IMG/VR virus record: IMGVR_UViG_3300009177_000028
Coordinates: 140,388 to 204,387 of that record
Reading direction: 5' to 3' (one strand)
Length of the DNA stretch: 64,000 nt
Shown here: one piece after another, positions 15,397 to 58,806 of the stretch
How positions within the stretch are numbered: position 1 is the first letter of the stretch
Layout: each line of letters opens with the position of its first letter
Program-made: the position numbers and the translations under genes
The notes under the pieces: model-generated
The model's input: only the letters and a program-made list of their open reading frames with translations
Told to the model about the DNA's origin: nothing
Database searches by the model: none

Positions 15397-15528
15397 GCGG
15401 TACCCCTCAGAGACTGTATGACCATGTCTCAGCAAGACGCAAGCACAATCGCCCAGCAAAAATCATGCCATGTTGCCTTTTGCCCCACCTGTGGTTAATT
15501 TTCCATCAGGAACTGGAATCTGAATTTT

Positions 15529-19852: not shown

Positions 19853-20230
19853 TTAGATTACTTCCTTTGAGTGGTTGGGGCGCGGTTAGCGCCCTCTCTT
19901 ATGCCAGTCTATCCCGTTAGGTATGGGGTGATTATATCTGTATTGCTACATAGGGTCACATATGGCAACGTATGGTCATATATGGTCATTAATTAGATCT
20001 TTTATAATGGTATAAGATGCTTATTACTTTTAATAAGTGGGAAATGGTGGGATGGGGTGGCATTTTATGGGAAAGTAATATATATTTTATCGTATTGGTC
20101 GTTTTGGTAATGTATATGTTAGTTGGAGATGGCCCACAGGCTGTGTGATTTGGTGTTTGACCCCTGTTTGGGAGGCGCCATCCCACCCCGCACGACAGTC
20201 TCCCACCTTTTTCGGGCGGCTCCAATGTAG

Positions 20231-20265
20231 GTGGTATGAGTTATGCAATATGCAATCATGCCAAC
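20231..20265 (+). promoter_or_regulatory. repeated sigma54-type element, copy 1
   Basis: TGG-TATGAGTTAT-GC (GG-N10-GC) then AATATGCAATCATGCCAAC. Confidence 0.65.
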
Positions 20266-20380
20266 TACATCGTAATCAATGTAGGATAATCTCTTTTATT
20301 TATCTATACTGTGTGATGAATACTTTTTATTATTATCATTCATCACATGTAGTATATTTTTATTTATTAGAGGAATGTGG

Positions 20381-20415
20381 TTGGTATGCCGTTTGCAATA
20401 TGCAATCATGCCAAC
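20381..20415 (+). promoter_or_regulatory. repeated sigma54-type element, copy 2
   Basis: TTGG-TATGCCGTTT-GC; 26-bp perfect direct repeat with copy 1 (20244-20269 / 20394-20419). Confidence 0.65.
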
Positions 20416-20458
20416 TACAGGTAGGATAAGCAGCAGAAAGCCCCTGAAACCTGGGCGG

Positions 20459-20493
20459 TTGGCATGAAACCTGCAATTAGCAAGCGTGCCAAC
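20459..20493 (+). promoter_or_regulatory. repeated sigma54-type element, copy 3
   Basis: TTGG-CATGAAACCT-GC then AATTAGCAAGCGTGCCAAC. Confidence 0.7.
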
Positions 20494-20560
20494 TACCTGG
20501 GCGGGGCGAGTAGGAGGTCCACCTACCCCAAGCGGGCGCCTCTCTCGTGTGTCGAGCATG

Positions 20561-20644
20561 CCGCGCAACGGCCGATCGTGGCGCGCTAGTGGCGCGGTAG
20601 CGCAAGGATCGGCCGCTAGTGGCGCGGTACCGCGCAACGGCCGA
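20561..20644. repeat. GC-rich A-B-B-A direct repeat block
   Basis: CCGCGCAACGGCCGA at 20561 and 20630; CGCTAGTGGCGCGGTA at 20584 and 20614. Confidence 0.75.
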
Positions 20645-20915
20645 AAGCGCACTAGAAGAGCGCCTAGCGCGACCCTAGCCTATGACACCAAGATCATACC
20701 CCGGATGTAGTCAAAGGTCATGAGCTGTCGTTCAATGTTGCTCGAAAAAGGCTAATGGTTTCGTAGGGTAGACCTACATTATCCGCCAAAACTTTCGGAA
20801 TTCGTCATGGTAGTTTCTTTTCCTACATCGCAATTAGTTGCTGAATTCCGACCAACCAGGACACAAAGATCATTGTGGGATAAGATGCTACACCAATGAT
20901 ATCATATAGTTACAG

Positions 20916-20933
20916 TTGGCACCGACCCTGCAA
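20916..20933 (+). promoter_or_regulatory. sigma54-type promoter
   Basis: TTGGCACCGACCCTGCAA, GG-N10-GC, upstream of boxA and the long plus-strand gene run. Confidence 0.6.
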
Positions 20934-21032
20934 TGACCCCTAGACGCAACGGGAACGGATGAGAGCAGGGGTCACGCGGGCGGATCGCCCGCGCAGCCTG
21001 ACAGCGCACATGGTGCGCGCTGTCGCTCGATG

Positions 21033-21044
21033 TGGTCTTTGACA
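21033..21044 (+). promoter_or_regulatory. rrn-type boxA antitermination element
   Basis: TGGTCTTTGACA, 10/12 to E. coli boxA TGCTCTTTAACA. Confidence 0.5.
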
Positions 21045-21577
21045 ATCTAAACGTCTCACACGGGCGCCTCATGTGCGCCTACAGCGCGCGCCTAGCGCGT
21101 GTGCCTCCTACCTACGGTAAGGGACAGTGTGCGATAGCGGCGACCATATAGGTCCGCTCCTACCGCGTCCCACAATCACCGAGTAGCGCACACAACCGAA
21201 GCCACTGTGGGTTACATGCGGAAGATGTGTGGGCCAGGTGACCCGTCCTACATTCACTCCACACGGGAGACGATGTAGGCTACCCTCACCTAGTGTACGA
21301 ATCCCGAGGAGGGATAAACCGTAGGTAGGGCAATGTCCTGCTAGAGCCGACAATGTAGGCCGCGGTGAGGCGGTATGAGTCCGCAGCGTACGAATCAAGA
21401 GACTAAACGACTATGTGGGAGGGACGCCTAGAGTGTCCTTCCCCCGTAGCGTAAAGCCTACAAGGTAAGTAACTCTCTCCAAGTCTACGGTATTGGAGTA
21501 GGAGAGAACACCTTGTGAGCTTTACGCTGCGATCATCGCAGAGTGTCCCACAACAGCAGACAACAGGAGCCAACATC

Positions 21578-22150
21578 ATGAGCCAGACCACCAGCAACGA
21601 CAGCGCCGTCAAGTCGACCACCATCTCCTCCGATGTGGAGGAGCGTCTCACCGCCACCTTCAAGACCCTTCACCATCTCGTCTCCACCCACATGGTGAGT
21701 GCGGGTGCGAAGCTCACCTTCATGTCGGAGTTCGAGAAGTGTGGGATGGAGGACTACAAGGAGGTCGCGCATGCGGCACGGAAGCTGCTCGGCGCCAAGC
21801 GTCAGGAAAAGTGGGAGAACCGCATCAAGGGGATCCGTGCGGGGATCCAGGGTGTGGTCGACACCTACATGAACCGCAAACGTGCGGCCAAGGCGCAGTT
21901 CGACGCACTCCCGGAGGAGTTGCGCGCAGAAGGTGTGACCTTCAACCCCAACGTCTCCATCCCGGTGAAGGAGCTTGTGGGATGCTTCCCGCAGGGTGCG
22001 ACCCAGGAGCAGATCCTCCGAGACCTGAAGGATCTCTCCTACAACGTCATCCAGAATGCGGAAAAGGCGTACCTCATCCGCGTTGCCTTCGTTGCCGACA
22101 AGGTGGCAGACGAGGCGCCCAAGTCGGAGAAGACCGCCAAGGCGGCCTGA
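21578..22150 (+). CDS. hypothetical protein (first gene of the GC-rich run)
   Basis: AGGAG SD; strongly GC3-biased codons; ends KTAKAA. Confidence 0.85.
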   Translation: MSQTTSNDSAVKSTTISSDVEERLTATFKTLHHLVSTHMVSAGAKLTFMSEFEKCGMEDYKEVAHAARKLLGAKRQEKWENRIKGIRAGIQGVVDTYMNRKRAAKAQFDALPEELRAEGVTFNPNVSIPVKELVGCFPQGATQEQILRDLKDLSYNVIQNAEKAYLIRVAFVADKVADEAPKSEKTAKAA

Positions 22151-22173
22151 GCGCGCAGCGTTCCGCTGAGTCT

Positions 22174-22227
22174 CCTACATCCTGCTCCCAACTGCTCCCA
22201 TGTGGGGTGGTTGGGGGCAGTCGTAGG
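22174..22227 (+). ncRNA. intergenic hairpin family copy H1
   Basis: CCTAC-ATC-CTGCTCCCAAC...GTTGGGGGCAG-TC-GTAGG. Confidence 0.7.
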
Positions 22228-22252
22228 CGAGTCAACCACCAAGGAGGTTCAT

Positions 22253-22474
22253 GTGTTCCATACTCAGCCCAAGACCTACAAGAAGGTCTCTCTCCTCCAC
22301 AAGAACTACTTCGACCTACTCTGCGGCTCCAATGGCTACAGTAGGGAAGAGTACGACATCTGCGAGAAGGAAGACAATCTGGGGTTTCCTGTCTACACCG
22401 TGGACGTGTGGTCGCAAAGGTGCGACGACATGATGCAACGTGTGTTCAGCGAAGCCAACGGCTACAAGCGCTGA
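22253..22474 (+). CDS. hypothetical protein
   Basis: AAGGAGG SD then GTG 22253. Confidence 0.75.
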   Translation: MFHTQPKTYKKVSLLHKNYFDLLCGSNGYSREEYDICEKEDNLGFPVYTVDVWSQRCDDMMQRVFSEANGYKR

Positions 22475-22478
22475 TCTA

Positions 22479-22521
22479 CCTACACCATGCTCCCGAGGGT
22501 TACTTCGGGGGCATGAGTAGG
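22479..22521 (+). ncRNA. intergenic hairpin family copy H2
   Basis: CCTAC-ACC-ATGCTCCCGA...TCGGGGGCAT-GA-GTAGG (compensatory ATGC/GCAT). Confidence 0.72.
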
Positions 22522-22533
22522 AGGACCAGACAC

Positions 22534-22932
22534 ATGTACAAGTACGACGGACACTCCTTCAACATGTGCGAGGAGTGGTCGCAATGCCCACAACATCGAA
22601 CGGAGACCCACATGAAGGACAAGCTCGCTCAAGCGCCCGACCAGGTGCGACAGTTCGTACACGCTCTCATCTCCAACGCCAAAGAGGTGGAAGGGTGGGA
22701 AGTGTGCGACATGGAGGATGGCAAGTGCTTCGCTGACACCATAGCCCACATCGAGCACAAGGAAGACGGAAGGTGGGTGGTGTGCGACAACTACGAACGG
22801 TTCTTCTCTCTCATCTACACCTACACGGTGGCAGGCGAGTGGACCGTGCGCCGCATGTATGGCGAAGGTGGGGAGATGCCCTACAGCTTCGCCAAGTGTA
22901 TGGCGGATGCCTCCATCATGTTCACTGGCTGA
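22534..22932 (+). CDS. hypothetical protein
   Basis: AGGAGG SD; fills the space between H2 and H3. Confidence 0.75.
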   Translation: MYKYDGHSFNMCEEWSQCPQHRTETHMKDKLAQAPDQVRQFVHALISNAKEVEGWEVCDMEDGKCFADTIAHIEHKEDGRWVVCDNYERFFSLIYTYTVAGEWTVRRMYGEGGEMPYSFAKCMADASIMFTG

Positions 22933-22936
22933 TCCA

Positions 22937-22978
22937 CCTACGTCATGCCCTCATGTGTGTACATGGGGGCATTGGTAG
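22937..22978 (+). ncRNA. intergenic hairpin family copy H3
   Basis: CCTAC-GTC-ATGCCCTCATG...CATGGGGGCAT-TG-GTAG. Confidence 0.7.
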
Positions 22979-23019
22979 TGGGATTAGGCTCACTAACACC
23001 AAACAAGGGAGAATGTAAG

Positions 23020-23199
23020 ATGATCAAGTTCATTGTGGTTGTTCTGGCGTGCATCGGGGCATTCTTCGGTCTGGCGATTCTGTCGGGTCATGTCCCCCAG
23101 ATCTCCCACACCGCCTTCAACATCAGCACCTTTCAGGTCACGTGGTTGATGCTGGGCGTGTGTGCGACCGGGTTCGTCTCCTACAAGGTGTGCAAGTAA
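23020..23199 (+). CDS. small two-TM membrane protein, paralogue of 38068-38253
   Basis: MIKF...H.P...AF....WL..G.C...F..YK..K shared. Confidence 0.75.
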   Translation: MIKFIVVVLACIGAFFGLAILSGHVPQISHTAFNISTFQVTWLMLGVCATGFVSYKVCK

Positions 23200-23253
23200 A
23201 GGGTGCTGTAAGCGCCTAACGTACACATAACGTTACTCCAATCGAGGAAAACA

Positions 23254-23300
23254 GCGGCATATAGGCGCCTAGGTGGGTTCGACTCCCACATGCCGCCCTA
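23254..23300 (+). ncRNA. tRNA-like minihelix (acceptor stem plus T-arm)
   Basis: GCGGCAT/ATGCCGC 7-bp stem, TAGG-CG-CCTA mini-hairpin, GTGGG-TTCGACT-CCCAC T-arm. Confidence 0.5.
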
Positions 23301-23324
23301 AGTCATACATCAGCGGAGGATGTC

Positions 23325-23531
23325 ATGGTCAAGGTTACCAAGTGCCCCAATGTGGGTGATGCGGTCAAGATCGTCAAAGGCAAGAGGTCGGGTGATGTAG
23401 GCATCATCAAGCGATGTGCCTCGGTGTGGGGAGAGGACCGACTCAAGTGGTCGTCCTTCCTACTCGACATCAATGGTGAGGAAGTGTGGGTGCGTACGCA
23501 CCATGTGGAGAAACTGGAGAACGCGGCCTGA
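23325..23531 (+). CDS. KOW/SH3-like small protein
   Basis: VGDAVKIVKGKRSGDVGII KOW-like motif; ends ENAA. Confidence 0.6.
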   Translation: MVKVTKCPNVGDAVKIVKGKRSGDVGIIKRCASVWGEDRLKWSSFLLDINGEEVWVRTHHVEKLENAA

Positions 23532-23533
23532 CA

Positions 23534-23574
23534 CCCACACCCTGCTCCTAAGTAATCCTTGGGGGCAGAAGTGG
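23534..23574 (+). ncRNA. intergenic hairpin family copy H4
   Basis: CCCAC-ACC-CTGCTCC...GGGGGCAG-AA-GTGG (compensatory CCAC/GTGG). Confidence 0.7.
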
Positions 23575-23608
23575 TTGGCACGCTTGCATATAGCACAACG
23601 TATGCCAA
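23574..23608 (-). promoter_or_regulatory. repeated sigma54-type element, copy 4 (antisense)
   Basis: minus strand TTGG-CATACGTTGT-GC then TATATGCAAGCGTGCCAAC. Confidence 0.65.
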
Positions 23609-23620
23609 AGGAGGATTCCC

Positions 23621-24145
23621 ATGAAGATCAAGAGCCAGCGCACCACGACCTACACCGAGACCTACTCCCTCACCTTCGAGTACATCGGCTCCAATGGGAG
23701 CGGGTGTGCGTTCGACTGCGACAAGGAGGGAAAGGTCGACCTGACCAAGCTGCACCCGTGTGCGATTCTGACCTACACCGAAGCCAAGTTCGGACAGGTC
23801 ACCCGACGTGAGAACGTGCAGTACCGTGTGGGTGCAGATGGGGAATACGAGCCCATCCCCGGCACGGGTGAGATGGTCACCCGAGAGGTGAGCAAGGGTG
23901 AGGTCATCACCTACATCAACCGCCAGATCGTTCCTGCGGTGGGAGAGTGTGATTGTTGTGGGAGGGATGTCCACCTCTACGGTTTCACCAACACATGTGA
24001 GTGTGGGGCCGACTACAACATGTCGGGTCAGATGCTCGCTCCTCGTGAACAGTGGGGAGAGGAGACAGGTGAGACAGCCGCCGACATCCTCTCCTTCGAC
24101 TCCTACGATCGGGAGCCCATGGGCACCGATGAAGGATGGTTCTGA
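23621..24145 (+). CDS. hypothetical Cys-rich protein
   Basis: GGAGG SD; CDCC..C.C cluster. Confidence 0.8.
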   Translation: MKIKSQRTTTYTETYSLTFEYIGSNGSGCAFDCDKEGKVDLTKLHPCAILTYTEAKFGQVTRRENVQYRVGADGEYEPIPGTGEMVTREVSKGEVITYINRQIVPAVGECDCCGRDVHLYGFTNTCECGADYNMSGQMLAPREQWGEETGETAADILSFDSYDREPMGTDEGWF

Positions 24146-24161
24146 CAAAGTAGGAGTGCCG

Positions 24162-24203
24162 CCTACACCCTGCCTTCATGTGCAAGCATGAGGGTAGAAG
24201 TAG
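24162..24203 (+). ncRNA. intergenic hairpin family copy H5
   Basis: CCTAC-ACC-CTGCCTTCATG...CATGAGGGTAG-AA-GTAG (two G-U pairs on plus strand). Confidence 0.72.
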
Positions 24204-24237
24204 TTGGCATGCTTGCATGTAGCAGATTGTATGCCAA
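24203..24237 (-). promoter_or_regulatory. repeated sigma54-type element, copy 5 (antisense)
   Basis: minus strand TTGG-CATACAATCT-GC then TACATGCAAGCATGCCAAC. Confidence 0.65.
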
Positions 24238-24269
24238 TCGACCCCAAACACCCAAGGTAGGAGAGTGTC

Positions 24270-24830
24270 ATGAACTTCACGACCAAACCGGATACGTTCG
24301 TTCTCGTGGTGGCGGCCCTGTCGGATAAGCTGGTCCAGAAGGAGAACGAGTGTGTGGAGCTGCGAGACCACATCGCCTCCGACCATGCCAGCATGGACGA
24401 CATGCAGCGCACCATCACCGACCTGCGGGTCCAGTGTGAGCGACTGCAAGACAAGGCGGATGATGTGGACTACTTCCGCACTCGCTATCAGGACATGTCC
24501 CACAAGCTGGAGAACTACGAACACCTCCGCTCACAGAATGCCGAACTGTGGGAGCAGGTGCGAGTCCTGAAGATGGAGAACCACAAGCTCCGCTACGGTG
24601 GGCAGACTCCCGAGGAGACGGCCAACAACTACATGCTCTCCCAGGGGAGGCAGGTGTGGGAGCGTGGCAACAAGATTCAGTGCATCAAGGAGGTGCGAGA
24701 GGTGAGTGGATGGGGGCTGAAGGAAACCAAGGATTGGTGCGAAGCCTACATCGCCCGCCTGGATAACGAAAAGGAGGAGAGCGGCCCCGGTACCAAGCGC
24801 TCCTCCGGCAACGTAGCCAAAACTGGCTGA
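24270..24830 (+). CDS. coiled-coil protein with ribosomal bL12 (L7/L12) C-terminal-domain-like motif
   Basis: heptad-rich region then NKIQCIKEVREVSGWGLKETKDWCE. Confidence 0.65.
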   Translation: MNFTTKPDTFVLVVAALSDKLVQKENECVELRDHIASDHASMDDMQRTITDLRVQCERLQDKADDVDYFRTRYQDMSHKLENYEHLRSQNAELWEQVRVLKMENHKLRYGGQTPEETANNYMLSQGRQVWERGNKIQCIKEVREVSGWGLKETKDWCEAYIARLDNEKEESGPGTKRSSGNVAKTG

Positions 24831-24834
24831 CGCA

Positions 24835-24876
24835 CCTACACCCTGCCTCTATGTGTGAACATGGGGGCAGGAGTAG
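24835..24876 (+). ncRNA. intergenic hairpin family copy H6
   Basis: CCTAC-ACC-CTGCCTCTATG...CATGGGGGCAG-GA-GTAG. Confidence 0.72.
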
Positions 24877-24911
24877 CTGATTCAGACACAACACATGAAA
24901 GGAGAGAGGTC

Positions 24912-25037
24912 ATGAAGGTTCACAAGTCGCAGCGTGTGTTCCAAGAGGAGAAGAAGTATCCGGGTGTGGGTGCCCTCATCTGCGTCGGCTCTGGTCTCCT
25001 CTTTTGGGGGAGCTTGGCCTACCTCTTCGTTCACTGA
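24912..25037 (+). CDS. small membrane protein
   Basis: GAGG SD; C-terminal hydrophobic helix. Confidence 0.55.
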   Translation: MKVHKSQRVFQEEKKYPGVGALICVGSGLLFWGSLAYLFVH

Positions 25038-25057
25038 GGGAGTAGTGGGTCCAAGGG

Positions 25058-25092
25058 GTTGGCATGCTTGCATAGTGCAACATCCATGCCAC
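25058..25092 (-). promoter_or_regulatory. repeated sigma54-type element, copy 6 (antisense)
   Basis: minus strand GTGG-CATGGATGTT-GCA, canonical TTGCA -12 box. Confidence 0.7.
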
Positions 25093-25237
25093 AGCAGGCA
25101 TGTCGCCCCTACACCTACCTCAGAATACCTTCACCTATAATTCTTGTTGCACCTAACTTGAAACGTGCTAACTTATAATCTCGCCATTCTCGCAAGCCAA
25201 GGCCAAAACCTACATCGGCCCCATTAGGAGATAAGTC

Positions 25238-26131
25238 ATGAACGTGTATGAGATTGTCACCGAACGGATCATTGCAGCCCTGGAAAAGGGTGTCGTACCT
25301 TGGCGCATGCCCTGGCGTACCCAAGGTGGGAGCGGTCTCCCCAAGAACCTACAGAGTGGGAAGGAGTACCGAGGTGTCAACATCTTCCTACTGGGTGCGC
25401 AGGGGTACGCCTCTCCCTGGTGGGTTACCTACAAGCAGTGTACGGCCCGAGGTGGGCAGGTGCGCAAAGGTGAGAAGGGCACCCCGGTCATCTTCTGGAA
25501 GGTAGGAGATCATAAGACCAAGGTGGGCAAGAGTGGGAAACCGGAGAAGATGTTTATCCTCCGGTACTACACTGTCTTCAATGTCGCCCAGTGTGATGGG
25601 CTGGACTACCCCAAGGAGGCGGTGGTGGAAGCTCCCACCTTCGACCCCATCGAGCAATGCGAGAAGATCGTTCTCGCCTACAAGACCCTACCCAAGATTG
25701 AGCACGGAGGTGGGCGAGCCTGCTACTCCCCCTCCTTCGACAAGGTGATGATGCCGGAAAAGGAGAGCTTTGGTAAGAGGGAGGAATACTACTCCACACT
25801 CTTCCACGAGCTTACCCACAGCACCGGACATGAGAGCAGGTTGAACCGGGATGGGATCATGAATCCCATTCGGTTTGCCTCACATGACTACAGCTTTGAG
25901 GAGCTGGTAGCAGAATGTGGGGCGGCCTTTCTCTGCGCACATGCGGGTATCTTGGATACCACGCTGGACAACTCGGCCGCCTACATCTCCCACTGGGTGA
26001 GCAAGCTGAAGAGTGAGCCAAGGTGGATTGTGGAAGCCTCAAGTAAGGCAGCTAAGGCGGCTGACTACATCATGGGAGACCTGGTCAAAAAGGAGTCAGA
26101 GTCGGAGGAGTCAAGCGAGGAAGCCGCTTGA
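25238..26131 (+). CDS. ardC: ArdC-family ssDNA-binding antirestriction protein with zincin-like domain
   Basis: GVVPWRMPW, YRGVN, TYKQ..GGQVRKGEKG, YTVFNVAQ, TLFHELTHSTGH..RLNR, YSFEELVAE. Confidence 0.93.
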   Translation: MNVYEIVTERIIAALEKGVVPWRMPWRTQGGSGLPKNLQSGKEYRGVNIFLLGAQGYASPWWVTYKQCTARGGQVRKGEKGTPVIFWKVGDHKTKVGKSGKPEKMFILRYYTVFNVAQCDGLDYPKEAVVEAPTFDPIEQCEKIVLAYKTLPKIEHGGGRACYSPSFDKVMMPEKESFGKREEYYSTLFHELTHSTGHESRLNRDGIMNPIRFASHDYSFEELVAECGAAFLCAHAGILDTTLDNSAAYISHWVSKLKSEPRWIVEASSKAAKAADYIMGDLVKKESESEESSEEAA

Positions 26132-26218
26132 ACCGACATGTCAGGGACTGGGCTGGCCTACTCGGCTGGCTCAGTCTATTATCCTACATCCTCACACACA
26201 AGCCCTGAAAGGACGACC

Positions 26219-26638
26219 ATGAACGACAAGAGACCCTGGAATGAGGGAGGGGAGGAGAAGCCATATAGTGTCTCACTGTGGATACAGGATCCCTCCGACA
26301 TGAGTGACAATGACACATGTATGGCCGGGGAAGACTTCGCCACCGAAAAGGAAGCGCGAATGTGTCTGGCCGACATGAACGCACACTTCAATGACAGGTT
26401 CTACAAGGACGTACCTTATGTCCTGTTGGACGGCCCGAACGACCTACACGAGGTGACAGTGCGCACCCAAGCCCTCAAGCGGATGCAACGTGAGAGGGAG
26501 TGCGAGGACAGGGCGGCAAGGTCGGAGATGGCCATGCAAGCTGGGATGGGTATGGGCATTCATGCCTACAACGACATGATGGGATACGACTCTGAAGAGT
26601 ACGACCCTGACCTACACGGATACCTGCACGAAGACTGA
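26219..26638 (+). CDS. hypothetical protein
   Basis: AAAGGA SD; acidic. Confidence 0.75.
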   Translation: MNDKRPWNEGGEEKPYSVSLWIQDPSDMSDNDTCMAGEDFATEKEARMCLADMNAHFNDRFYKDVPYVLLDGPNDLHEVTVRTQALKRMQRERECEDRAARSEMAMQAGMGMGIHAYNDMMGYDSEEYDPDLHGYLHED

Positions 26639-26667
26639 GCAACCACAACAACCCGAAAGGTACGACC

Positions 26668-26886
26668 ATGAGCGACAACAACGGCAACAAGAGCGAAGGT
26701 AGCATCAAGACCGACAAGCGGAAGCAGTCTCTCTACTTTCCGGAGAGCATGCTCCAAGAGATCAAGGAGGAGGCGGCTCGGCTGGATCGTAGTCTGTCGT
26801 GGGTGGTTCAGCGTGCATGGAAGCTGGCACGCACCGAAGTCAAGAATCTGCCCAGCGTCTCCGACATCGAGACGGAGGACGAGTAA
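26668..26886 (+). CDS. MXAN_4361/MXAN_4362-family (TIGR04563-like) ribbon-helix-helix small protein
   Basis: DKRKQSLYFPESMLQEIKEEAARLDRSLSWVVQRAWKLAR matches the myxobacterial family as recalled. Confidence 0.88.
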   Translation: MSDNNGNKSEGSIKTDKRKQSLYFPESMLQEIKEEAARLDRSLSWVVQRAWKLARTEVKNLPSVSDIETEDE

Positions 26887-26894
26887 TCGTACCA

Positions 26895-26936
26895 CCTACA
26901 CCCTGCCCATTAGTGAGAGCTAGTGGGCAGGAGTAG
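26895..26936 (+). ncRNA. intergenic hairpin family copy H7
   Basis: CCTAC-ACC-CTGCCCATTAG...CTAGTGGGCAG-GA-GTAG. Confidence 0.72.
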
Positions 26937-26970
26937 TTGGCATGCTTGCATGTTGCACATCTCATGCCAC
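26936..26970 (-). promoter_or_regulatory. repeated sigma54-type element, copy 7 (antisense)
   Basis: minus strand GTGG-CATGAGATGT-GC then AACATGCAAGCATGCCAAC. Confidence 0.65.
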
Positions 26971-27004
26971 GGGGCGCCAGGCCCACACTCACCCACAATT
27001 CAGC

Positions 27005-27022
27005 GTGGCACATGACTTGCAT
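27005..27022 (+). promoter_or_regulatory. sigma54-type promoter (sense)
   Basis: GTGGCACATGACTTGCAT, canonical TGGCAC-N5-TTGC. Confidence 0.65.
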
Positions 27023-27079
27023 GTAATTGCATGGTCAATCAAAAGTGCTACAATTGATCAAAAGGAAAAGGAGGTTATC

Positions 27080-27313
27080 ATGTTTGGTATGAACAAGGCG
27101 CACATTGACACCGTCTATCAGCGAGAGGACGACATGTCCGACCTGATGCGCCGATGTCGGATGGCCCTCGACATGGGAGCCTCCAAGGAAGAAGTTCACG
27201 ACATCTGCATCCAAGCGGGTCAAAGTGAGGAACAAGCCTACTTGACCTACATCGCAGCCAAGCTGCTCACACGTGACGAAGCGTGCGAGACTGGCGCCCG
27301 AAAGGTGGCCTGA
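27080..27313 (+). CDS. hypothetical protein
   Basis: AAGGAGG SD, ATG 27080. Confidence 0.75.
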   Translation: MFGMNKAHIDTVYQREDDMSDLMRRCRMALDMGASKEEVHDICIQAGQSEEQAYLTYIAAKLLTRDEACETGARKVA

Positions 27314-27314
27314 C

Positions 27315-27791
27315 ATGTACTCCAAAGAGATCAAAGGTAGTTGGTTCGGCGTGACCATTCCCGAATGGTTGCGAGCCTTCGACTGTCGGTCCAGCGAGGA
27401 CGATATCGCACCTCGTACTCCCTGGGGCTCCTATCTCTGGTCAAGTGAGAGAGCTGCCGTGGACCTGGGCCTGCGTGCGGAAGGTGTCTACAACGACACT
27501 ACGCCCGTGGGCTGCTCCACCTACATCGATGCTCGTACGGCTCCTGAGTCGGAGTTGAAACGACAGGTGGAGAATATGGTGGCAGAGGCGACCAGACTTC
27601 GGGAGGAGTACCTAGAAGGGAAGAAGTTTCCCGATACTGAGGGACAAGGTGGGAGTTGTCTCTACATGCCGGTGGCTGTCTGCCTGAGTAACTTCGGGTG
27701 GTCGGTCCTGGCAGATCGGACCCAAGGAATCGTTCGCCGGTTTGGCTACAATGCCACACCCAAACGTACCAAGAAAGGAAGTGTGCGATGA
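27315..27791 (+). CDS. hypothetical protein
   Basis: abuts previous stop; ATGA overlap to next. Confidence 0.75.
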   Translation: MYSKEIKGSWFGVTIPEWLRAFDCRSSEDDIAPRTPWGSYLWSSERAAVDLGLRAEGVYNDTTPVGCSTYIDARTAPESELKRQVENMVAEATRLREEYLEGKKFPDTEGQGGSCLYMPVAVCLSNFGWSVLADRTQGIVRRFGYNATPKRTKKGSVR

Positions 27792-28390
27792 GCAAGTACA
27801 AGGGTGACGGGGCGTTGGAGCAGATCAACCCCGAGCGACTTACCTTGGGGTGTGTGGTGCGCATGCCCTACGGAAGTGGGGAAGTGCCTGCCTTTGGTGA
27901 CAGTGTCATCATCGGTATCCACGTCTCCTACTCTTCCAAGCGAACGAGTAAGGAGCGGTGCGATAAGCGCCACTACGAGACTCTCGCACAAGCTCTTACC
28001 CAAGCGCAGGATGGCGACTTCGTGGTGGTGAGTCTGGCTCGCCCCTACGTGTACGCCAACAACCCCTTCGTCTCTACACCGGGCTGGCTGGTCGGGTGCG
28101 AGAAGTACGAGGTGATGGGAGACCGCATCATCGACACCCACAAGGTGGTGGTTCAGAGCACGGGTGAGTATGCCACCTACAACATCAAACCTGCGCTCCA
28201 TTCGTGGGAGGTGGTGGTTGGCAACATCGGGAGCGTCTATCGCGACTTGTCGGAGAGCGCGGCCCGAGCCACCTACAAGGTGTACGTAGAGAACAGCAAG
28301 TGGCAGGGTGGACGTGCCAGTGGGGAAAGCGTCACTCTCTTCTGCGATGGTGAGATTGTGGAGGAGCATGTGGGGACGGTGGAAGGATGA
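27788..28390 (+). CDS. hypothetical protein
   Basis: coupled ORF, coding-like GC3. Confidence 0.75.
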   Translation: MSKYKGDGALEQINPERLTLGCVVRMPYGSGEVPAFGDSVIIGIHVSYSSKRTSKERCDKRHYETLAQALTQAQDGDFVVVSLARPYVYANNPFVSTPGWLVGCEKYEVMGDRIIDTHKVVVQSTGEYATYNIKPALHSWEVVVGNIGSVYRDLSESAARATYKVYVENSKWQGGRASGESVTLFCDGEIVEEHVGTVEG

Positions 28391-28629
28391 TTACATACCT
28401 CGACCCCAAACAAGTCATTGCCAAGCGCCAGACCACTCCTCCCCACAACCGGAGTCGCAGTGGGTATGGCAACAAGCTGCCTACATCCTGGGAGCTTCAA
28501 CTACAGGACAAGCGGTGGAGGCGGGTGTACGTGATTCAGTGGAGCAACGCTGGATCCGCCTACATCCTGGTCAAAGGTGAGAAGTTGTTCCTGGGTTCCT
28601 ACGAACCCTCCTATGAAGGGAAGGTGTGA
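28387..28629 (+). CDS. conserved phage-type hypothetical protein
   Basis: GYGNKLPT...RRVY..WSNAGSAY motif recalled from phage hypotheticals. Confidence 0.7.
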   Translation: MITYLDPKQVIAKRQTTPPHNRSRSGYGNKLPTSWELQLQDKRWRRVYVIQWSNAGSAYILVKGEKLFLGSYEPSYEGKV

Positions 28630-28630
28630 G

Positions 28631-29011
28631 ATGGGCTGGGATAAAGCATGCGGAGATGAGCAGTGTGAGGGATGTGACGCCACCCTGGAGGAAGGGGAGG
28701 ACATGTATGTCCAAGGGGACAGCGTGTACTGCGAAGGGTGCAACGAGGACCGCTTGGATGACGAAGCGGGTGAATGGGATGAATTGGACTACATGGACCG
28801 TGAAGGTGACTATCCCATCGATGGGGTAGGATTCGCGGACCCTGGTGGTCACTCGGCCCTACGTGCAGCTACACCCAACAACCCAAGGGACTGCGATTGT
28901 CCTACCTGTGGGGCGGAGGACGTTCTGACCCGCATCGACCGTCAACGTGGGTATCAGTGCGACAGGTGCGCTGATCGGGCGGAAGGTCGGAGCGGGTACG
29001 GAGACTACTGA
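28631..29011 (+). CDS. Zn-finger acidic protein
   Basis: several CxxC pairs (CEGC, CPTC, CDRC). Confidence 0.75.
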   Translation: MGWDKACGDEQCEGCDATLEEGEDMYVQGDSVYCEGCNEDRLDDEAGEWDELDYMDREGDYPIDGVGFADPGGHSALRAATPNNPRDCDCPTCGAEDVLTRIDRQRGYQCDRCADRAEGRSGYGDY

Positions 29012-29012
29012 C

Positions 29013-29330
29013 ATGAAGACACTGGTGCTGGTGGAGGATGATCTGATGCTTGCTAGCACCTTCATTCGGGTGTTGGGCAAAACTCACAACATCCTCCACT
29101 TCCTGACAGTCAAGGATGCCAGAGCACATCTGGCCTTGAATCCCACACCTGATGTCCTCCTCCTGGATCGTCAGGTGGGGTATGACAATGGGTGGGCGTT
29201 GCGGGAGGAGGTGGGTACGGGTGTCAGGGTGGTCCTGATGACGGGCGCTCCTCCCCAAGGCAATTCACTTACCTTCTTCCACAAGGGAGTAGATAACATA
29301 CAAAAACTTATCAGTATGGTAGAAGGCTAA
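29013..29330 (+). CDS. stand-alone receiver domain protein
   Basis: LVLVEDD, VLLLD, VLMTG, FHKG. Confidence 0.8.
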   Translation: MKTLVLVEDDLMLASTFIRVLGKTHNILHFLTVKDARAHLALNPTPDVLLLDRQVGYDNGWALREEVGTGVRVVLMTGAPPQGNSLTFFHKGVDNIQKLISMVEG

Positions 29331-29334
29331 ACTT

Positions 29335-29377
29335 CCTACACCCTGCCTATTAGAATTATCTAGTGGGCAGAAGTAGG
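29335..29377 (+). ncRNA. intergenic hairpin family copy H8
   Basis: CCTAC-ACC-CTGCCTATTAG...CTAGTGGGCAG-AA-GTAGG. Confidence 0.72.
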
Positions 29378-29421
29378 GGGATTCATCCTGAATCTTCTGA
29401 GACAAGGAAAGAGGAGAGCGC

Positions 29422-29976
29422 ATGAATAAGTTGGTGTATGCGGTAGTGGTTGCCTTGGCAGCGGTGGTGGGATGTGCAGCTCCGGTGGGAGACAAGTCGG
29501 AGCAGGTGGGACAGGTCAGTCAGGCGCTGGTTACCTTCGACCCTGCGACAGGGACGGGGTTTGTGGGGAAAGGTGATATCCAGCTTCCCTTCGGGTGGAA
29601 CAATGCCACCTTGCAGGCCAATGCAAGTTCGCTCACCTTCACCTACCAGAGCAGCGCCACCTACGAGGCGGTGTGCGAGTGGACCACCGGTGAAGGGACT
29701 CGTGGTCAACGGACCCACGATGTCACACACACCAAGACCAGTGTGGTCAACGACACCATCTCCTACGATGCTCGCACCCACAAGCAGGTGGACGGATTCT
29801 TCCTGACAGGGTACGGCAGTGTGACCGAAGGTGGGGAACCTGTTCCCGAGGTAGGAGGACCCTGCCCTGGCAACCCTGGAACGGATGGGGTGTGGGTCAG
29901 TGTGGTCCTGCTCAACTCCACGGGTGGGGGCTTGTGGGTGACCAACGCAGCGGGTGGGACGGCTCAGCTTCTGTAG
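29422..29976 (+). CDS. lipoprotein of unknown function
   Basis: lipobox LAAVVGC; FDPATGTGFVGKGDIQLPFGWNN motif recalled from bacterial secreted hypotheticals. Confidence 0.8.
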   Translation: MNKLVYAVVVALAAVVGCAAPVGDKSEQVGQVSQALVTFDPATGTGFVGKGDIQLPFGWNNATLQANASSLTFTYQSSATYEAVCEWTTGEGTRGQRTHDVTHTKTSVVNDTISYDARTHKQVDGFFLTGYGSVTEGGEPVPEVGGPCPGNPGTDGVWVSVVLLNSTGGGLWVTNAAGGTAQLL

Positions 29977-29984
29977 AGATACTT

Positions 29985-30058
29985 TCTACATCCTGCCGAT
30001 TATTCGTCTGGCTGATAAACTCGGTTTATTCGTCTGGCAGATAGTCGGCAGTAGTAGG
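29985..30058 (+). ncRNA. intergenic hairpin family copy H9 (extended)
   Basis: TCTAC-ATC-CTGCCGATTAT...ATAGTCGGCAG-TA-GTAGG; loop holds TATTCGTCTGGC twice (30001, 30027). Confidence 0.68.
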
Positions 30059-30304
30059 AGGTGTGTCATGTAATCGGCTAACTAACTTGTTTACCCGATA
30101 GTGTGGGAAACCCTGAGAGTGTGTCGCGACATTCAAGACATGGTGTATTGAATGGGCGCATGTGAGAATCCACGATACCCCAAGAGCTTTTGACGACAAT
30201 GTAGTTCTAAGTCTTCTATTACTCGCCTATAACCGAAACCTGCCGAAAGGGTGGGGAGTAGGTTATGGGCGCACATAGAGGGATTAGAAAGGAAAGGCAA
30301 GACC

Positions 30305-30769
30305 ATGCACGACATCAACGGCAAACCACTTCACATCGGCTCGGACATCTACTCTTCCCTACATGGACTCTGCAAGATCGTCGGTGTGCGAGAGGAGCAC
30401 AATCCCGACCAGGGAGGAGCTTGCATCGAGGTAAACTCCTACACTCGGGGTGGAGGTATCATCCTTCGCACTCACGAGCACAAGGTGACCAAGGTGCGTA
30501 CTTGGAAGGAGATGGCGGATGAATCCCTACGGGTGCAGGATGCCTGCAACCTGTCGGGAGTGGTCCACGCTTTCTCTACCATCATCACCGAGGTGCGCAC
30601 ACGGTTGGACAGTGAGGGCCAGGGTGGGACGGACAACGTCAACAACCATCCTGTCTGTCGTCTCTTCTCCGACAAGATTGCTTCCCTGACGGGTACGCAA
30701 TTCTGCAACGATGACGCACACCAAAACTTCTCCGATGCCTACAAGTGGGCACACGAGCAGAGCAAGTGA
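30305..30769 (+). CDS. hypothetical protein
   Basis: SD-like GGAAAGG; GTGA overlap to next. Confidence 0.75.
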   Translation: MHDINGKPLHIGSDIYSSLHGLCKIVGVREEHNPDQGGACIEVNSYTRGGGIILRTHEHKVTKVRTWKEMADESLRVQDACNLSGVVHAFSTIITEVRTRLDSEGQGGTDNVNNHPVCRLFSDKIASLTGTQFCNDDAHQNFSDAYKWAHEQSK

Positions 30770-30981
30770 GCAAGAAGCCTACTTACTCCCTGGTGAAGGG
30801 AGATGTCTTCATCGGGTCTGACTTGCAAGCCTGGACGGTGGACGAAGTGGTCAAACCGGAGGGCTGGAACACACTTCCGCAGATTGGGGAAAAGCCCAAG
30901 GTGTGGGAGGTGAGAGCACATCGGGGCCAAGCCAATCGGCGCTTCTACTACCACGGCACACGTTTGGTGGAAGTCAAGTAG
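30766..30981 (+). CDS. hypothetical protein
   Basis: GTGA overlap. Confidence 0.65.
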   Translation: MSKKPTYSLVKGDVFIGSDLQAWTVDEVVKPEGWNTLPQIGEKPKVWEVRAHRGQANRRFYYHGTRLVEVK

Positions 30982-31127
30982 TTACGCGCACTTAGGTGAG
31001 ACATTATCGGTATGGCGATAAGAATATCGCTATAGCGATAAAAAGTCTGTAACCACTTGGAACTACAGGGGAATGCGCGAACTAGGGCGCGAGAGTCGGA
31101 GGTGTAGGGCGGGCTGGGCCTGGGGTG

Positions 31128-31162
31128 GTTGGCATGTTTGCATGTAGCAAAAAGGGTGCCAC
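31128..31162 (-). promoter_or_regulatory. repeated sigma54-type element, copy 8 (antisense)
   Basis: minus strand GTGGCACCCTTTTTGCT, canonical TGGCAC-N5-TTGC. Confidence 0.7.
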
Positions 31163-31375
31163 CTGCCGCTGGAGCTTCTGGGAGGCGCACCCGCACCTAC
31201 CTTCTGCTTCAATTCTTTTGCAATTGAGCGTTTCTTAGTGGCGCATGTGAAAGCGCGCTCCCATAATGAATGGCCAGCGCAAACAAACGAATGAGAGGGG
31301 TGGGACAATGAAGCTGGGAATCTGACAACGGCAATTCAACCTGCAACCTCAACCTACAGAGAAGGATAATCAACC

Positions 31376-31705
31376 ATGGCAATGCGAGCAATCAACGAAG
31401 TTCACGACAGCGCAATCATCCGACAGTTGGTCACGATGGACGAGATGGACCTCTTCATGTCCACCTTCGACCAGACTGTCACGGTAGGTGAGCATCCACT
31501 AACCTTCTCGGGATGGGCAATCAAGAATGAAGTGCAGGTGATGCAGTGTGCGTCCGAGTGCGACATCGCCTTGGGGCTGCTGGCGCTGTCTCCCATCTTT
31601 CAGCACAAGGACTACGCGGATGACGCCTTGTACGAGGTGGGATGTCTGATGCACGGTAGCGAAGAAGAATACATCAACTTCTTGATGTTGATCAGCAATC
31701 GCTGA
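31376..31705 (+). CDS. hypothetical protein
   Basis: GAAGGA SD. Confidence 0.75.
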   Translation: MAMRAINEVHDSAIIRQLVTMDEMDLFMSTFDQTVTVGEHPLTFSGWAIKNEVQVMQCASECDIALGLLALSPIFQHKDYADDALYEVGCLMHGSEEEYINFLMLISNR

Positions 31706-31709
31706 TTGT

Positions 31710-31754
31710 CCTACACCCTGCCCATAACTGGAAACGGTTGTGGGCATGAGTAGG
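31710..31754 (+). ncRNA. intergenic hairpin family copy H10
   Basis: CCTAC-ACC-CTGCCCATAAC...GTTGTGGGCAT-GA-GTAGG. Confidence 0.7.
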
Positions 31755-32600: not shown

Positions 32601-32604
32601 GACA

Positions 32605-54750: not shown

Positions 54751-54795
54751 CTGGCATACATCTTGCTAGTGGGTAAGATTGGCATAAACTTTGCA
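54751..54795 (+). promoter_or_regulatory. two tandem sigma54-type promoters
   Basis: CTGGCATACATCTTGCT (54751) and TTGGCATAAACTTTGCA (54779), both GG-N10-GC with TTGC. Confidence 0.7.
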
Positions 54796-58378: not shown

Positions 58379-58388
58379 GAGCAAAAAC

Positions 58389-58465
58389 CAAACGGCCCCT
58401 ACTTCGTAGGCCGATCTCACTCAGTGTGGTGAGGTTGGACCTTCGACTAGGGGCCGTTTTTATTT
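58389..58465 (+). terminator. long hairpin/terminator
   Basis: AAACGGCCCCTA...TAGGGGCCGTTTTTATTT. Confidence 0.75.
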
Positions 58466-58789
58466 GTCCTACGTATCCTACATTTCCCTACATAGTTACC
58501 CACTGTAGTCGTCAAGCAAATACCATGCCATGACGCGGTAACGCAGCCAGCTACGCAAAGAGTGCAAAGTTGCCACAATCTTGCGTACCGAGCAAAAGTG
58601 CCACAACCGTAGGCTTTACGGCTTAGCTACGATGTAGGTGTCGCAACTTTTTGCAGACTGCCACAACGGCCGAGGTCGGGCGGTAGATCGCAGTGCCCTG
58701 GTAGCTCGTGGTCTAATTGACTTGGTTTTCCGGGCAATTACGAGCTTCAATTGTACCCTGCTGGTCTCAGTGTGAATGACCTGCGAAAG

Positions 58790-58806
58790 CTGGCATGGCA
58801 TTAGCA
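58790..58806 (+). promoter_or_regulatory. sigma54-type promoter
   Basis: CTGGCATGGCATTAGCA, GG-N10-GC, about 60 nt upstream of boxA. Confidence 0.55.

What the first reader, a model, noticed from the sequence alone, without database searches (positions are those of the whole stretch)
20231..31754. Synthesis: a T7-like early-region architecture rebuilt from myxobacterial parts
Seen in order: tandem sigma54-type promoters, boxA, a long structured leader, then a plus-strand run with conserved internal-loop hairpins between genes and antisense copies of the promoter element. Knowledge: T7 uses tandem host promoters A1-A3 and RNase III hairpins; lambda uses boxA-based antitermination; T4-type PeSL promoter/stem-loop cassettes mediate modular shuffling. 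Inference: one integrated control system (sigma54 initiation, Nus antitermination, hairpin processing, antisense shut-off), possibly tied to host phosphorelays through the receivers and kinase, and doubling as recombination substrates for early-gene exchange.
Basis: inference. Interest (0 to 1): 0.8.

Follow-up and report, generated by a model that had tools for sequence, protein, structure and literature searches.

The report
Sigma-54-type promoter regulon in soil phage
An uncultured ~204-kb soil phage, probably of myxobacteria, appears to run its early genes from sigma-54-type promoters, a long folded leader and repeated gene-end RNA hairpins, a control layout barely documented in phages.

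Summary
Three tandem sigma-54-type sites (20232, 20382, 20460) and a fourth (20917) head a 1.7-kb gene-free stretch. Its last 640 nt fold far better than shuffles (z -5.1). Ten copies of one internal-loop hairpin sit just after stop codons between 22.1 and 31.8 kb. Five copies of the promoter element lie on the minus strand.

The TGGCAy-N5-yTGCw motif is about 10-fold enriched, and recurs at matching positions in six related phage genomes with variable spacers. The hairpins show strong covariation and fold better as plus-strand RNA in 10 of 10 copies, so they act in the sense mRNA.

A 70%-identical relative (L176) keeps the tandem promoters, leader and hairpins. There the intergenic elements are double, reading sigma-54-like on both strands. 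In the window only the antisense half has correct spacing.

The boxA-like site in this leader is weak and not conserved in L176. A canonical boxA sits in a second leader at 58.9 kb.

A myxobacterial (Polyangiaceae) host has real though indirect support. Processing by RNase III, antisense shut-off, a phosphorelay link and recombination roles are untested. No activator (EBP) gene was found in the window.

The parts
20224..20269 (+). Element A copy 1 (P1). Sigma-54-type core TGGTATGAGTTATGCA at 20232-20247, then ATATGCAATCATGCCAACTAC and a CTACAT..ATGTAG hairpin.
   Evidence: one strain change T>C at 20237 moves it towards TGGCAC
20374..20419 (+). Element A copy 2 (P2). Core TGGTATGCCGTTTGCA at 20382-20397.
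20452..20497 (+). Element A copy 3 (P3). Core TGGCATGAAACCTGCA at 20460-20475.
20917..20932 (+). P4, a simple sigma-54-type site TGGCACCGACCCTGCA without the palindromic extension. Its orthologue in L176 is at 5869, inside a conserved block.
20498..21577 (+). Leader 1, an untranslated and strongly structured RNA leader ahead of the first early gene. Islands conserved with L176 lie at 21301-21322 (ATCCCGAGGAGGGATAAACCGT) and 21347-21359 (CCGACAATGTAGG).
   Evidence: no Rfam family matches
21033..21052 (+). boxA-like motif TGGTCTTTGACAATCTAAAC.
   Evidence: not above chance alone; resembles the boxA of the leader-2 family; only TTGACA is kept in L176
21578..22150 (+). First early gene (190 aa), an orphan with no homologues outside its own cluster.
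22174..22228 (+). Hairpin B copy after the stop codon of gene 1. Strains with a 19-nt deletion place it 4-5 nt after the stop.
22479..22521 (+). Hairpin B copy, 4 nt after a TGA stop. Its 3' arm GTAGGAGG overlaps the Shine-Dalgarno sequence of the next gene.
22937..22980 (+). Hairpin B copy, 4 nt after a TGA stop.
23534..23574 (+). Hairpin B copy with a compensated CCCAC/GTGG lower stem, abutting an inverted element A.
23571..23608 (-). Element A, antisense copy. Core TGGCATACGTTGTGCT at 23592-23607 on the minus strand.
   Evidence: some strains carry a 31-nt insertion between the hairpin and the element
24162..24203 (+). Hairpin B copy abutting an inverted element A.
24200..24243 (-). Element A, antisense copy. 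Core TGGCATACAATCTGCT at 24221-24236.
24835..24876 (+). Hairpin B copy, 4 nt after a TGA stop. Strain L013 has an extra 116-aa gene inserted about 15 nt downstream.
25055..25092 (-). Element A, antisense copy upstream of ArdC. Core TGGCATGGATGTTGCA at 25076-25091. The orthologous L176 element is double-sided.
26895..26936 (+). Hairpin B copy. In three strains the distal stem is replaced at 10 positions with pairing kept.
26933..26970 (-). Element A, antisense copy. Core TGGCATGAGATGTGCA at 26954-26969.
27006..27021 (+). Simple sense sigma-54-type site TGGCACATGACTTGCA, 59 nt before the ATG at 27080.
29335..29377 (+). Hairpin B copy, 4 nt after a TAA stop.
29981..30062 (+). Longer hairpin B variant after the stop at 29976, followed by a Shine-Dalgarno sequence and a start-stop ATGTAA at 30068-30073.
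31125..31162 (-). Element A, antisense copy. Core TGGCACCCTTTTTGCT at 31146-31161.
31710..31754 (+). Hairpin B copy, 4 nt after a TGA stop.
26668..26886 (+). Ribbon-helix-helix (RHH) protein of family TIGR04563, a host-lineage clue and a candidate DNA-binding regulator.
15455..15470 (-). Outside the finding: sigma-54-type site 59 nt upstream of the histidine kinase gene (14242-15396, minus strand).
54752..54795 (+). Outside the finding: two tandem sigma-54-type sites upstream of the replicative helicase gene (54855-56435). The tandem pair is kept in relative L174.
58379..59199 (+). Outside the finding: leader 2. It holds promoter P(c) at 58791-58806, a canonical boxA TGCTCTTTGAAAACTGAA at 58865-58882, and a covarying hairpin at 59126-59158. 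It is homologous to the 750-850-nt leaders of five related phages.

Best explanation
This is the early control region of an uncultured ~204-kb tailed phage, probably of a Polyangiaceae-type myxobacterium, and it relies on host sigma-54 RNA polymerase.

Shown:
- Three tandem extended sigma-54-type promoters (element A) and a fourth simple one face a gene-free, strongly structured leader of about 1.1 kb and a plus-strand run of small early genes.
- A ten-member hairpin family sits immediately after stop codons and is selected as sense-strand RNA.
- Element A is an imperfect palindrome. In a 70%-identical relative its intergenic copies read as sigma-54 promoters on both strands. In this phage the five intergenic copies keep correct -24/-12 spacing only on the antisense strand.

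Inferred:
- Sigma-54 holoenzyme, with an unidentified activator (host-encoded, or encoded elsewhere in the phage), starts a long polycistronic early transcript at P1-P4.
- The leader protects or regulates this untranslated stretch.
- The gene-end hairpins punctuate the mRNA as processing, stability or attenuation sites, recognised through their conserved CCUAC/GUAGG base and internal loop.
- The antisense halves of element A fire short antisense RNAs across the gene ends.

Of these inferences, sigma-54 dependence is the best supported. The biochemical role of the hairpins and any role of the antisense promoters are the least.
For: Motif enrichment: 7 against 0.25 expected and 16 against 1.8.

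Conservation: 29 sites in six phage genomes have invariant GG and GC 12 nt apart and variable spacers.

Matching positions across phages:
- a tandem pair upstream of the helicase gene in the window and in L174;
- a site overlapping the helicase stop codon in five phages;
- promoters P(b) and P(c) of leader 2;
- P4 in the window and in L176.

Spacing: three sites lie 59-60 nt before start codons.

Leader: z -5.1, with conserved islands against L176.

Hairpins: 95% of cells paired, 9 of 15 pairs with compensatory changes, 0 of 500 shuffles as good. The plus strand is more stable than the minus strand in 10 of 10 copies. One strain variant swaps the distal stem and keeps the pairing.

Antisense half: it has sigma-54 spacing in both phages.

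Precedent: Pseudomonas phage YuA uses a sigma-54-like promoter (PMC10914365).

Host lineage: the TIGR04563 protein and RF2 point to myxobacteria. From general knowledge, myxobacteria are rich in sigma-54 activators.
Against: - No transcript data: no RNA run was listed.
- No activator ATPase or sigma-54 domain in the 64-kb window. The contig is not among 75 viral contigs with EBP Walker-A peptides, which is a weak negative.
- The helicase gene also has a sigma-70-like TTGCAG-N17-TAT(T/A)AC that is shared with L014, where no sigma-54-like site lies upstream.
- Element A is palindromic with a very conserved non-sigma-54 part, and in L176 the plus half is invariant including its spacer. Either could mean a binding site for another protein.
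- The same promoter type driving both sense and antisense transcription is hard to rationalise.
- The boxA-like motif of this leader is not conserved in L176.
- Phage G+C (39-57%) is far below that of known Polyangiaceae (about 70%, general knowledge).
Confidence: 0.55

Rival explanations
1. Element A is not a promoter. It is an operator or recognition site for a phage DNA-binding protein, for example the ribbon-helix-helix TIGR04563 protein or an unknown dimer. On this reading its resemblance to sigma-54 promoters comes from a palindromic half-site TTGGCAT-N6-TGC, and transcription starts elsewhere.
For: The element is an imperfect palindrome TTGGCAT...ATGCCAA with no strand preference in folding. 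Its conserved part reaches well beyond -24/-12, as ATGCAAGCATGCCAAC. In L176 the plus half is invariant including the spacer. The orientation differs between orthologous places in the two phages and in leader 2.
Against: Non-palindromic single sites fit the sigma-54 consensus even better: P4, 27006, the helicase sites, the kinase site and P(c). They are conserved across phages and always sense-oriented. In the window the two halves have unequal spacing (6 against 3 nt), which a symmetric dimer site would not tolerate. The half with variable spacer but fixed GG-N10-GC is the classic sigma-54 pattern.
Confidence: 0.2
2. The hairpin plus element A units are PeSL-like mobile regulatory cassettes, each a stem-loop attenuator followed by a promoter. 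Their main evolutionary role is to carry and shuffle small early genes. In the window's phage the sense promoter half has decayed, so the antisense reading is a by-product without function.
For: In L176 the order is stop codon, hairpin, sense promoter, Shine-Dalgarno sequence, ATG. That is the layout described for PeSLs (PMC2839356 and PMC4122927).

Strain-level differences cluster at the cassettes:
- a 31-nt insertion between hairpin and element;
- a swapped distal stem;
- an extra gene 15 nt after a hairpin in L013.

The early genes are orphans.
Against: All five window copies share the same 3-nt-shorter sense half and an intact antisense half with different spacers. That indicates long-term selection on the antisense half, not decay. 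The hairpins lack U-tracts. Seven of ten hairpins have no element A beside them. The one gene gain seen is not bounded by two cassettes.
Confidence: 0.15
3. The hairpins are translational devices rather than processing sites. A ribosome stopping at the stop codon 4 nt upstream melts the 5' arm. That either frees the downstream ribosome-binding site (coupling) or stalls termination.
For: The stop codon lies 4 nt before the hairpin in six of ten copies. Strain deletions restore that spacing after gene 1. The 3' arm GTAGGAGG overlaps the Shine-Dalgarno sequence at 22479 and 29981.
Against: In most copies the next ribosome-binding site lies 20-45 nt beyond the hairpin, or beyond element A. The conserved internal loop and base sequence suggest recognition by a protein.
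Confidence: 0.1

Closest known systems
Sigma-54-dependent promoters used by a phage (Pseudomonas phage YuA, promoter P015)
   Same: Host alternative sigma factor of the -24/-12 type used for phage genes. A transcription start there was mapped by ONT-cappable-seq and agrees with an earlier promoter-trap assay (PMC10914365).
   Different: YuA has one such promoter beside sigma-70 and phage-specific ones. Here at least 16 sites lie in 64 kb. They include tandem arrays, palindromic double sites and antisense copies, and they recur across a family of ~200-kb or larger phages. Nothing here is tested experimentally.
T7 early region (tandem host promoters A1-A3, RNase III sites between early genes)
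   Same: Three tandem host-type promoters at the head of a plus-strand early operon, and conserved internal-loop hairpins between genes (layout, from general knowledge).
   Different: The promoters are sigma-54-type, not sigma-70. There is a leader of about 1.1 kb. The hairpin geometry differs: a 4-5-bp lower stem, a 3x2 internal loop and a 10-13-bp upper stem. RNase III cleavage is untested, no sequence kinship exists, and no phage RNA polymerase gene was seen in the window.
PeSL cassettes of T4-type phages (PMC2839356, PMC4122927)
   Same: Repeated composite intergenic units of a stem-loop and an early promoter, in a region rich in small orphan genes. Strain differences sit next to them.
   Different: PeSL promoters are sigma-70-type and sense-oriented, and the stem-loops are effective terminators. 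Here the promoters are sigma-54-type, antisense-only in this phage and double in L176. The hairpins lack U-tracts, and recombination between them is not shown.
rrn / lambda boxA-dependent (Nus factor) antitermination
   Same: A boxA-like sequence downstream of a promoter in a long untranslated leader. Leader 2 at 58865-58882 reads TGCTCTTTGAAAACTGAA and is conserved in five phages.
   Different: In the leader of this finding the motif has two mismatches and is not conserved in L176. No boxB or boxC assignment was made, no N or Q protein was found, and no binding was tested.
REP (repetitive extragenic palindromes) of bacteria
   Same: Imperfect palindromes just downstream of stop codons, in many copies, with a conserved base that includes a GTAG/CTAC motif and a variable top (general knowledge).
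   Different: All copies here lie on one strand of a phage early operon, and no RAYT transposase was seen in the window. The G-U pattern shows selection at the RNA level.

Membership tests
Sigma-54-dependent promoter | GG and GC dinucleotides exactly 12 nt apart within TGGCAC-N5-TTGCW | tested here: met
   All sites tabulated keep GG-N10-GC. Enrichment is shown.
Sigma-54-dependent promoter | Spacer free to vary while the -24 and -12 elements stay fixed, among paralogues and orthologues | tested here: met
   (information profile). The exception is the plus halves in L176, which are invariant.
Sigma-54-dependent promoter | Sense orientation and a sensible distance to a downstream gene | tested here: inconclusive
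   Met for P1-P4, 27006, 54752/54780, 56417, 15455 and all sites in the relatives. Not met for the five intergenic copies or for 58515.
Sigma-54-dependent promoter | An enhancer-binding AAA+ activator and upstream activator sites | tested here: inconclusive
   No PF00158-type domain is in the window. The contig is absent from the EBP peptide scan (low sensitivity). The only shared upstream word is ATGTAGG. The remaining 140 kb of the contig was not read.
Sigma-54-dependent promoter | Transcription start 11-13 nt after the GC, dependent on rpoN | not testable with these tools
   No RNA run was listed.
boxA / Nus antitermination site | Match to GCTCTTTAACAA-type consensus downstream of the promoter in an untranslated leader | tested here: inconclusive
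   Site 21033-21052 has two mismatches and is not above chance. Leader 2 has a near-perfect copy.
boxA / Nus antitermination site | Conservation of the motif in orthologous leaders | tested here: not met
   For leader 1, L176 keeps only TTGACA. For leader 2 the feature is met in five phages.
boxA / Nus antitermination site | NusB/NusE binding and read-through of terminators | not testable with these tools
   -
RNase III processing site (T7 type) | Sense-strand RNA hairpin with an internal loop between genes | tested here: met
RNase III processing site (T7 type) | About two helical turns of duplex and cleavage in or near the internal loop | not testable with these tools
   The helices total 15-18 bp. 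No cleavage data exist.
PeSL-type mobile regulatory cassette | Composite stem-loop plus early promoter repeated in intergenic regions of an orphan-gene region | tested here: met
PeSL-type mobile regulatory cassette | Sigma-70-like sense promoter and terminator activity of the stem-loop | tested here: not met
   The promoter halves are sigma-54-like, and antisense in the window. There is no U-tract and no enrichment of terminator-like sites.
PeSL-type mobile regulatory cassette | Insertions, deletions and replacements between relatives bounded by the cassettes | tested here: inconclusive
   A few strain differences lie next to cassettes. No indel bounded by two cassettes was seen.

The most novel reading that the evidence does not exclude
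Element A is a face-to-face double sigma-54 promoter that evolution can set to sense, antisense or both. In this phage the antisense setting makes short RNAs that start at a conserved AUGCCAAC 5' end and pair with the gene-end hairpins of the early mRNA. The resulting duplexes are cut or silenced, which times early-gene shut-off. The switch would be thrown by a host enhancer-binding protein that the phage's own kinase and receiver proteins control.
Probability: 0.1. Interest if true: 0.85.

Novelty: new variant of a known kind. Interest (0 to 1): 0.62.

Why it matters
Sigma-54 promoters cannot fire without an ATP-driven activator. A phage whose early, replication and signalling genes sit behind them must either bring or hijack such an activator, which ties infection to host signalling. 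Only isolated sigma-54 promoters have been reported in phages (YuA).

Here a whole family of ~200-kb or larger soil phages shows them at conserved positions, in tandem arrays and in palindromic double form. With them come two long leaders, one carrying a canonical boxA, and a covarying gene-end hairpin family.

If confirmed, this would be a new style of phage gene control. It would also be a first look at the regulation of phages of Polyangiaceae, a group for which I know of no characterised phages. The hairpin and promoter models built here can be used to find more members.

Tried and rejected
Searches that found nothing useful:
- Megablast of the region against cultured phages gave no match.
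- Rfam at gathering and E-value thresholds gave nothing, apart from one chance-level hit on the tRNA-like element.
- tRNA search gave none.
- The first early protein has no homologues outside its own cluster.
- No RNA sequencing run was listed.
- The TIGR04563 protein has no match in phage or plasmid collections, and no paper mentions the family.

Strain data:
- Laying contigs of four DNA runs repeated strain variants already seen. It added one further gene-1 hairpin variant and showed that low word shares were low coverage.

Ideas rejected:
- The long leaders of the relatives are not orthologous to the finding's leader. They match a second leader at 58.4-59.2 kb. A covariance model of that leader hits leader 1 only at E 0.83.
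- Element A copies are not sigma-70 or plus-strand promoters. The -10 hexamers are poor, and GG and GC are 9 nt apart.
- Hairpin B is not the 5' hairpin of antisense transcripts. The plus strand is more stable in 10 of 10 copies.
- The stretch 56.4-57.3 kb is not a third leader. It holds two small genes that my ORF picking had missed.
- The kinase is not NtrB-like.

Weak or unresolved:
- The EBP scan of viral contigs used only Walker-A peptides, so its negative is weak.
- Wobble analysis of the element A palindrome gave no strand preference.
- A search for upstream activator sites found only the ATGTAGG word.

Full report
**Source and setting**

The window is the last 64 kb of a 204,387-bp viral contig, IMGVR_UViG_3300009177_000028. 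It has no near match among cultured phages. Nearly identical DNA is present in at least 20 soil, rhizosphere and groundwater metagenomes from many studies. No RNA run was listed.

The finding lies at a divergent junction.
- To the left are minus-strand genes: a C39 peptidase, a trypsin-like protease, a metalloprotease-like protein, a histidine kinase and a receiver.
- To the right is a plus-strand run of small genes, mostly orphans, that includes ArdC.

*Promoter-like sites.* Three copies of a 46-nt element (element A) at 20224-20497 each contain a sigma-54-type core, TGGyAy-N5-yTGCw. A fourth, simple site lies at 20917. The strict pattern occurs 7 times against 0.25 expected. A relaxed one occurs 16 times against 1.8.

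*Leader.* The 1.7 kb between 19853 and 21577 has no called gene. Its last 640 nt fold with z -5.1.

*Hairpins.* A hairpin family, CCTAC-acc-CTGCC...GGCAG-ga-GTAGG, occurs ten times between 22.1 and 31.8 kb. All copies are on the plus strand, and most lie 4 nt after a stop codon.

*Antisense copies.* Five more copies of element A lie on the minus strand in intergenic regions. Three of them directly abut a hairpin.

*Ordinary signals.* Sigma-70-like promoters and intrinsic terminators are not enriched in 19-33 kb.

**Are the sites sigma-54 promoters?**

The window holds independent simple sites in sense orientation:
- 59-60 nt before the start codons of the kinase gene (15455, minus strand), of a gene at 27080, and of the replicative helicase gene (54780, with a second site at 54752);
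- one site overlapping the helicase stop codon (56417).

Relatives were found through the helicase and fetched as L014, L015, L016, L174 and L175. They carry the same motif at matching positions:
- a tandem pair upstream of the helicase gene in L174;
- the site at the helicase stop codon in four relatives;
- two sites, P(b) and P(c), at the head of a 750-850-nt leader.

Across the sites tabulated, GG and GC stay fixed 12 nt apart while the spacer varies. That is the expected signature of this promoter class.

A precedent exists in Pseudomonas phage YuA.

Against this:
- no enhancer-binding ATPase is encoded in the window;
- a low-sensitivity scan did not find one on the contig;
- the helicase gene also has a sigma-70-like promoter shared with L014, which has no sigma-54-like site upstream of its helicase gene.

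**A closer relative changes the reading of the antisense copies**

A pattern scan for the hairpin found a second contig of 202,609 bp (L176). It is 64-78% identical and syntenic with 17.8-29 kb of the window. It keeps:
- three tandem element A promoters and the orthologue of P4;
- a leader of about 690 nt with conserved islands, ATCCCGAGGAGGGATAAACCGT and CCGACAATGTAGG;
- hairpins after stop codons.

In L176 the order is stop codon, hairpin, element A, ribosome-binding site, start codon. Most of its intergenic elements read as sigma-54 sites on both strands:
- the plus half is invariant, TGGCATACTCTGTGCw;
- the minus half has a variable spacer.

In the window the plus half of all five intergenic copies is 3 nt too short (GG and GC 9 apart), and only the minus half is intact.

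The antisense half is therefore the part common to both phages, which argues that it is selected. What it does remains unknown.

Element A folds about equally on both strands, so the palindrome is a DNA-level feature.

**The hairpins act in the sense RNA**

- With 14 copies from the two phages, 95.2% of cells pair, 9 of 15 pairs show compensatory changes, and no shuffle or slid control comes close (window alone).
- G-U pairs are frequent.
- The plus-strand fold is 3-13 kcal/mol more stable than the minus-strand fold in 10 of 10 copies.
- In three strains the distal stem of the 26895 hairpin is rewritten at 10 positions with pairing kept.
- A 19-nt deletion in some strains restores the 4-nt distance from the stop codon of gene 1.
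- The base (CCUAC/GUAGG), the internal loop and the first upper pairs are conserved in sequence, while the top varies. This suggests recognition by a protein.
- The word ATGTAGG/CCTACAT is also enriched in both leaders.
- The hairpins lack U-tracts, so they are not ordinary intrinsic terminators.

Whether they are RNase III sites, stabilisers, attenuators or coupling devices cannot be decided here.

**boxA**

The site at 21033-21052 is a fair match but is not above chance. L176 keeps only TTGACA there.

The window has a second long leader at 58.4-59.2 kb, and this one is the true homologue of the relatives' leaders. It contains:
- promoter P(c);
- a near-perfect boxA, TGCTCTTTGAAAACTGAA, conserved in five phages;
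- helices with covariation.

A covariance model of that leader finds leader 1 as its best other hit, but only at E 0.83.

The idea of Nus-type antitermination in long untranslated leaders is therefore well founded for this phage. For the leader of the finding it is only weakly founded.

**Host and the 'myxobacterial parts'**

- The 72-aa ribbon-helix-helix protein at 26668-26886 belongs to TIGR04563 (E 4.6e-33).
- It has more than 6,000 homologues. Every one named by NCBI is from Polyangiaceae, Byssovorax or Myxococcales, at 78-89% identity.
- The four best genome hits of the phage's release factor 2 are also Polyangiaceae-type myxobacteria, at 44-47% against about 40% for others.
- Kinase look-alikes are taxonomically mixed.
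- The helicase is only 25-29% identical to cultured phage proteins.

A myxobacterial host is thus likely but not shown. The low G+C of the phage is unusual for such a host.

**Recombination**

Strain differences do cluster at the cassettes:
- a 31-nt insertion exactly between a hairpin and element A;
- the swapped stem;
- an extra 116-aa gene 15 nt after a hairpin in strain L013;
- an 11-bp loop inversion at 20603-20613.

This resembles PeSL behaviour but is anecdotal.

**Verdict**

- Sigma-54-type initiation and sense-RNA hairpins are well supported.
- The antisense promoters are real features of unknown function.
- The boxA of this leader, RNase III processing, the phosphorelay link and recombination roles remain hypotheses.

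Noticed in passing
window 58379-59199: A second long leader, homologous to the 750-850-nt leaders of five related phages. It has a sigma-54-type site (58791-58806), a canonical boxA TGCTCTTTGAAAACTGAA (58865-58882) and a covarying hairpin with a conserved loop (59126-59158). This is a candidate new structured leader RNA family.
   Followed up: partly
window 58390-58530 (minus strand): In leader 2 the first promoter element is inverted relative to the relatives (TGGCATGGTATTTGCT on the minus strand). It is followed by a CUACA..UGUAG hairpin and a bidirectional terminator, so it could make a small RNA of about 130 nt.
   Followed up: no
window 23254-23299; L176 about 8443-8466: A tRNA-like minihelix: a 7-bp acceptor-like stem GCGGCAT/ATGCCGC and a T-arm GTGGG-TTCGACT-CCCAC, with no D or anticodon arm. 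It sits in the one early intergenic region that lacks hairpin B. The T-arm is conserved in L176. ARAGORN finds no tRNA there.
   Followed up: partly
window 6629-7726: The phage encodes a full-length peptide chain release factor 2 (PCRF and RF-1 domains). Its best genome matches are Polyangiaceae. Genes in the window read normally under the standard code.
   Followed up: partly
window 1-12700 versus 20000-34000: A sharp G+C change within one genome: 37-42% in the tightly packed left block and 53-57% in the early region (GC3 up to 0.8).
   Followed up: no
window 17775-19852 (minus strand): A cluster of three predicted peptidases (C39-like, trypsin-like, metalloprotease-like) lies next to a histidine kinase and a receiver. 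The kinase also lies beside the helicase gene in relatives L014 and the P0002 contig.
   Followed up: no
window 20603-20613: An 11-bp segment is exactly inverted in five strains (CAAGGATCGGC against GCCGATCCTTG). It is the loop of a small hairpin, so this is a flip-flop polymorphism.
   Followed up: partly
window 30057-30073: After the long hairpin variant there is a strong Shine-Dalgarno sequence followed by a start-stop ATGTAA.
   Followed up: no
L013 5292-5642: One strain carries an extra 116-aa gene, apparently a winged-helix type, inserted between hairpin 24835 and the small membrane-protein gene.
   Followed up: partly
window 56417-56435 and relatives: A sigma-54-type site overlaps the last five codons and the stop codon of the helicase gene in five phages. 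Both the protein C-terminus (G-x-x-x-A) and the DNA motif are kept.
   Followed up: partly
window 57316-58071 and 25238-26131: The phage encodes a Ku homologue and an ArdC-type anti-restriction/metallopeptidase protein. ArdC relatives occur in phiCbK-like Caulobacter and Brevundimonas jumbo phages.
   Followed up: no
whole window: The same phage, at 98.4-100% identity, turns up in soil, rhizosphere and groundwater metagenomes of more than ten studies. A second contig (L176) is almost the same length, 202.6 kb against 204.4 kb.
   Followed up: partly
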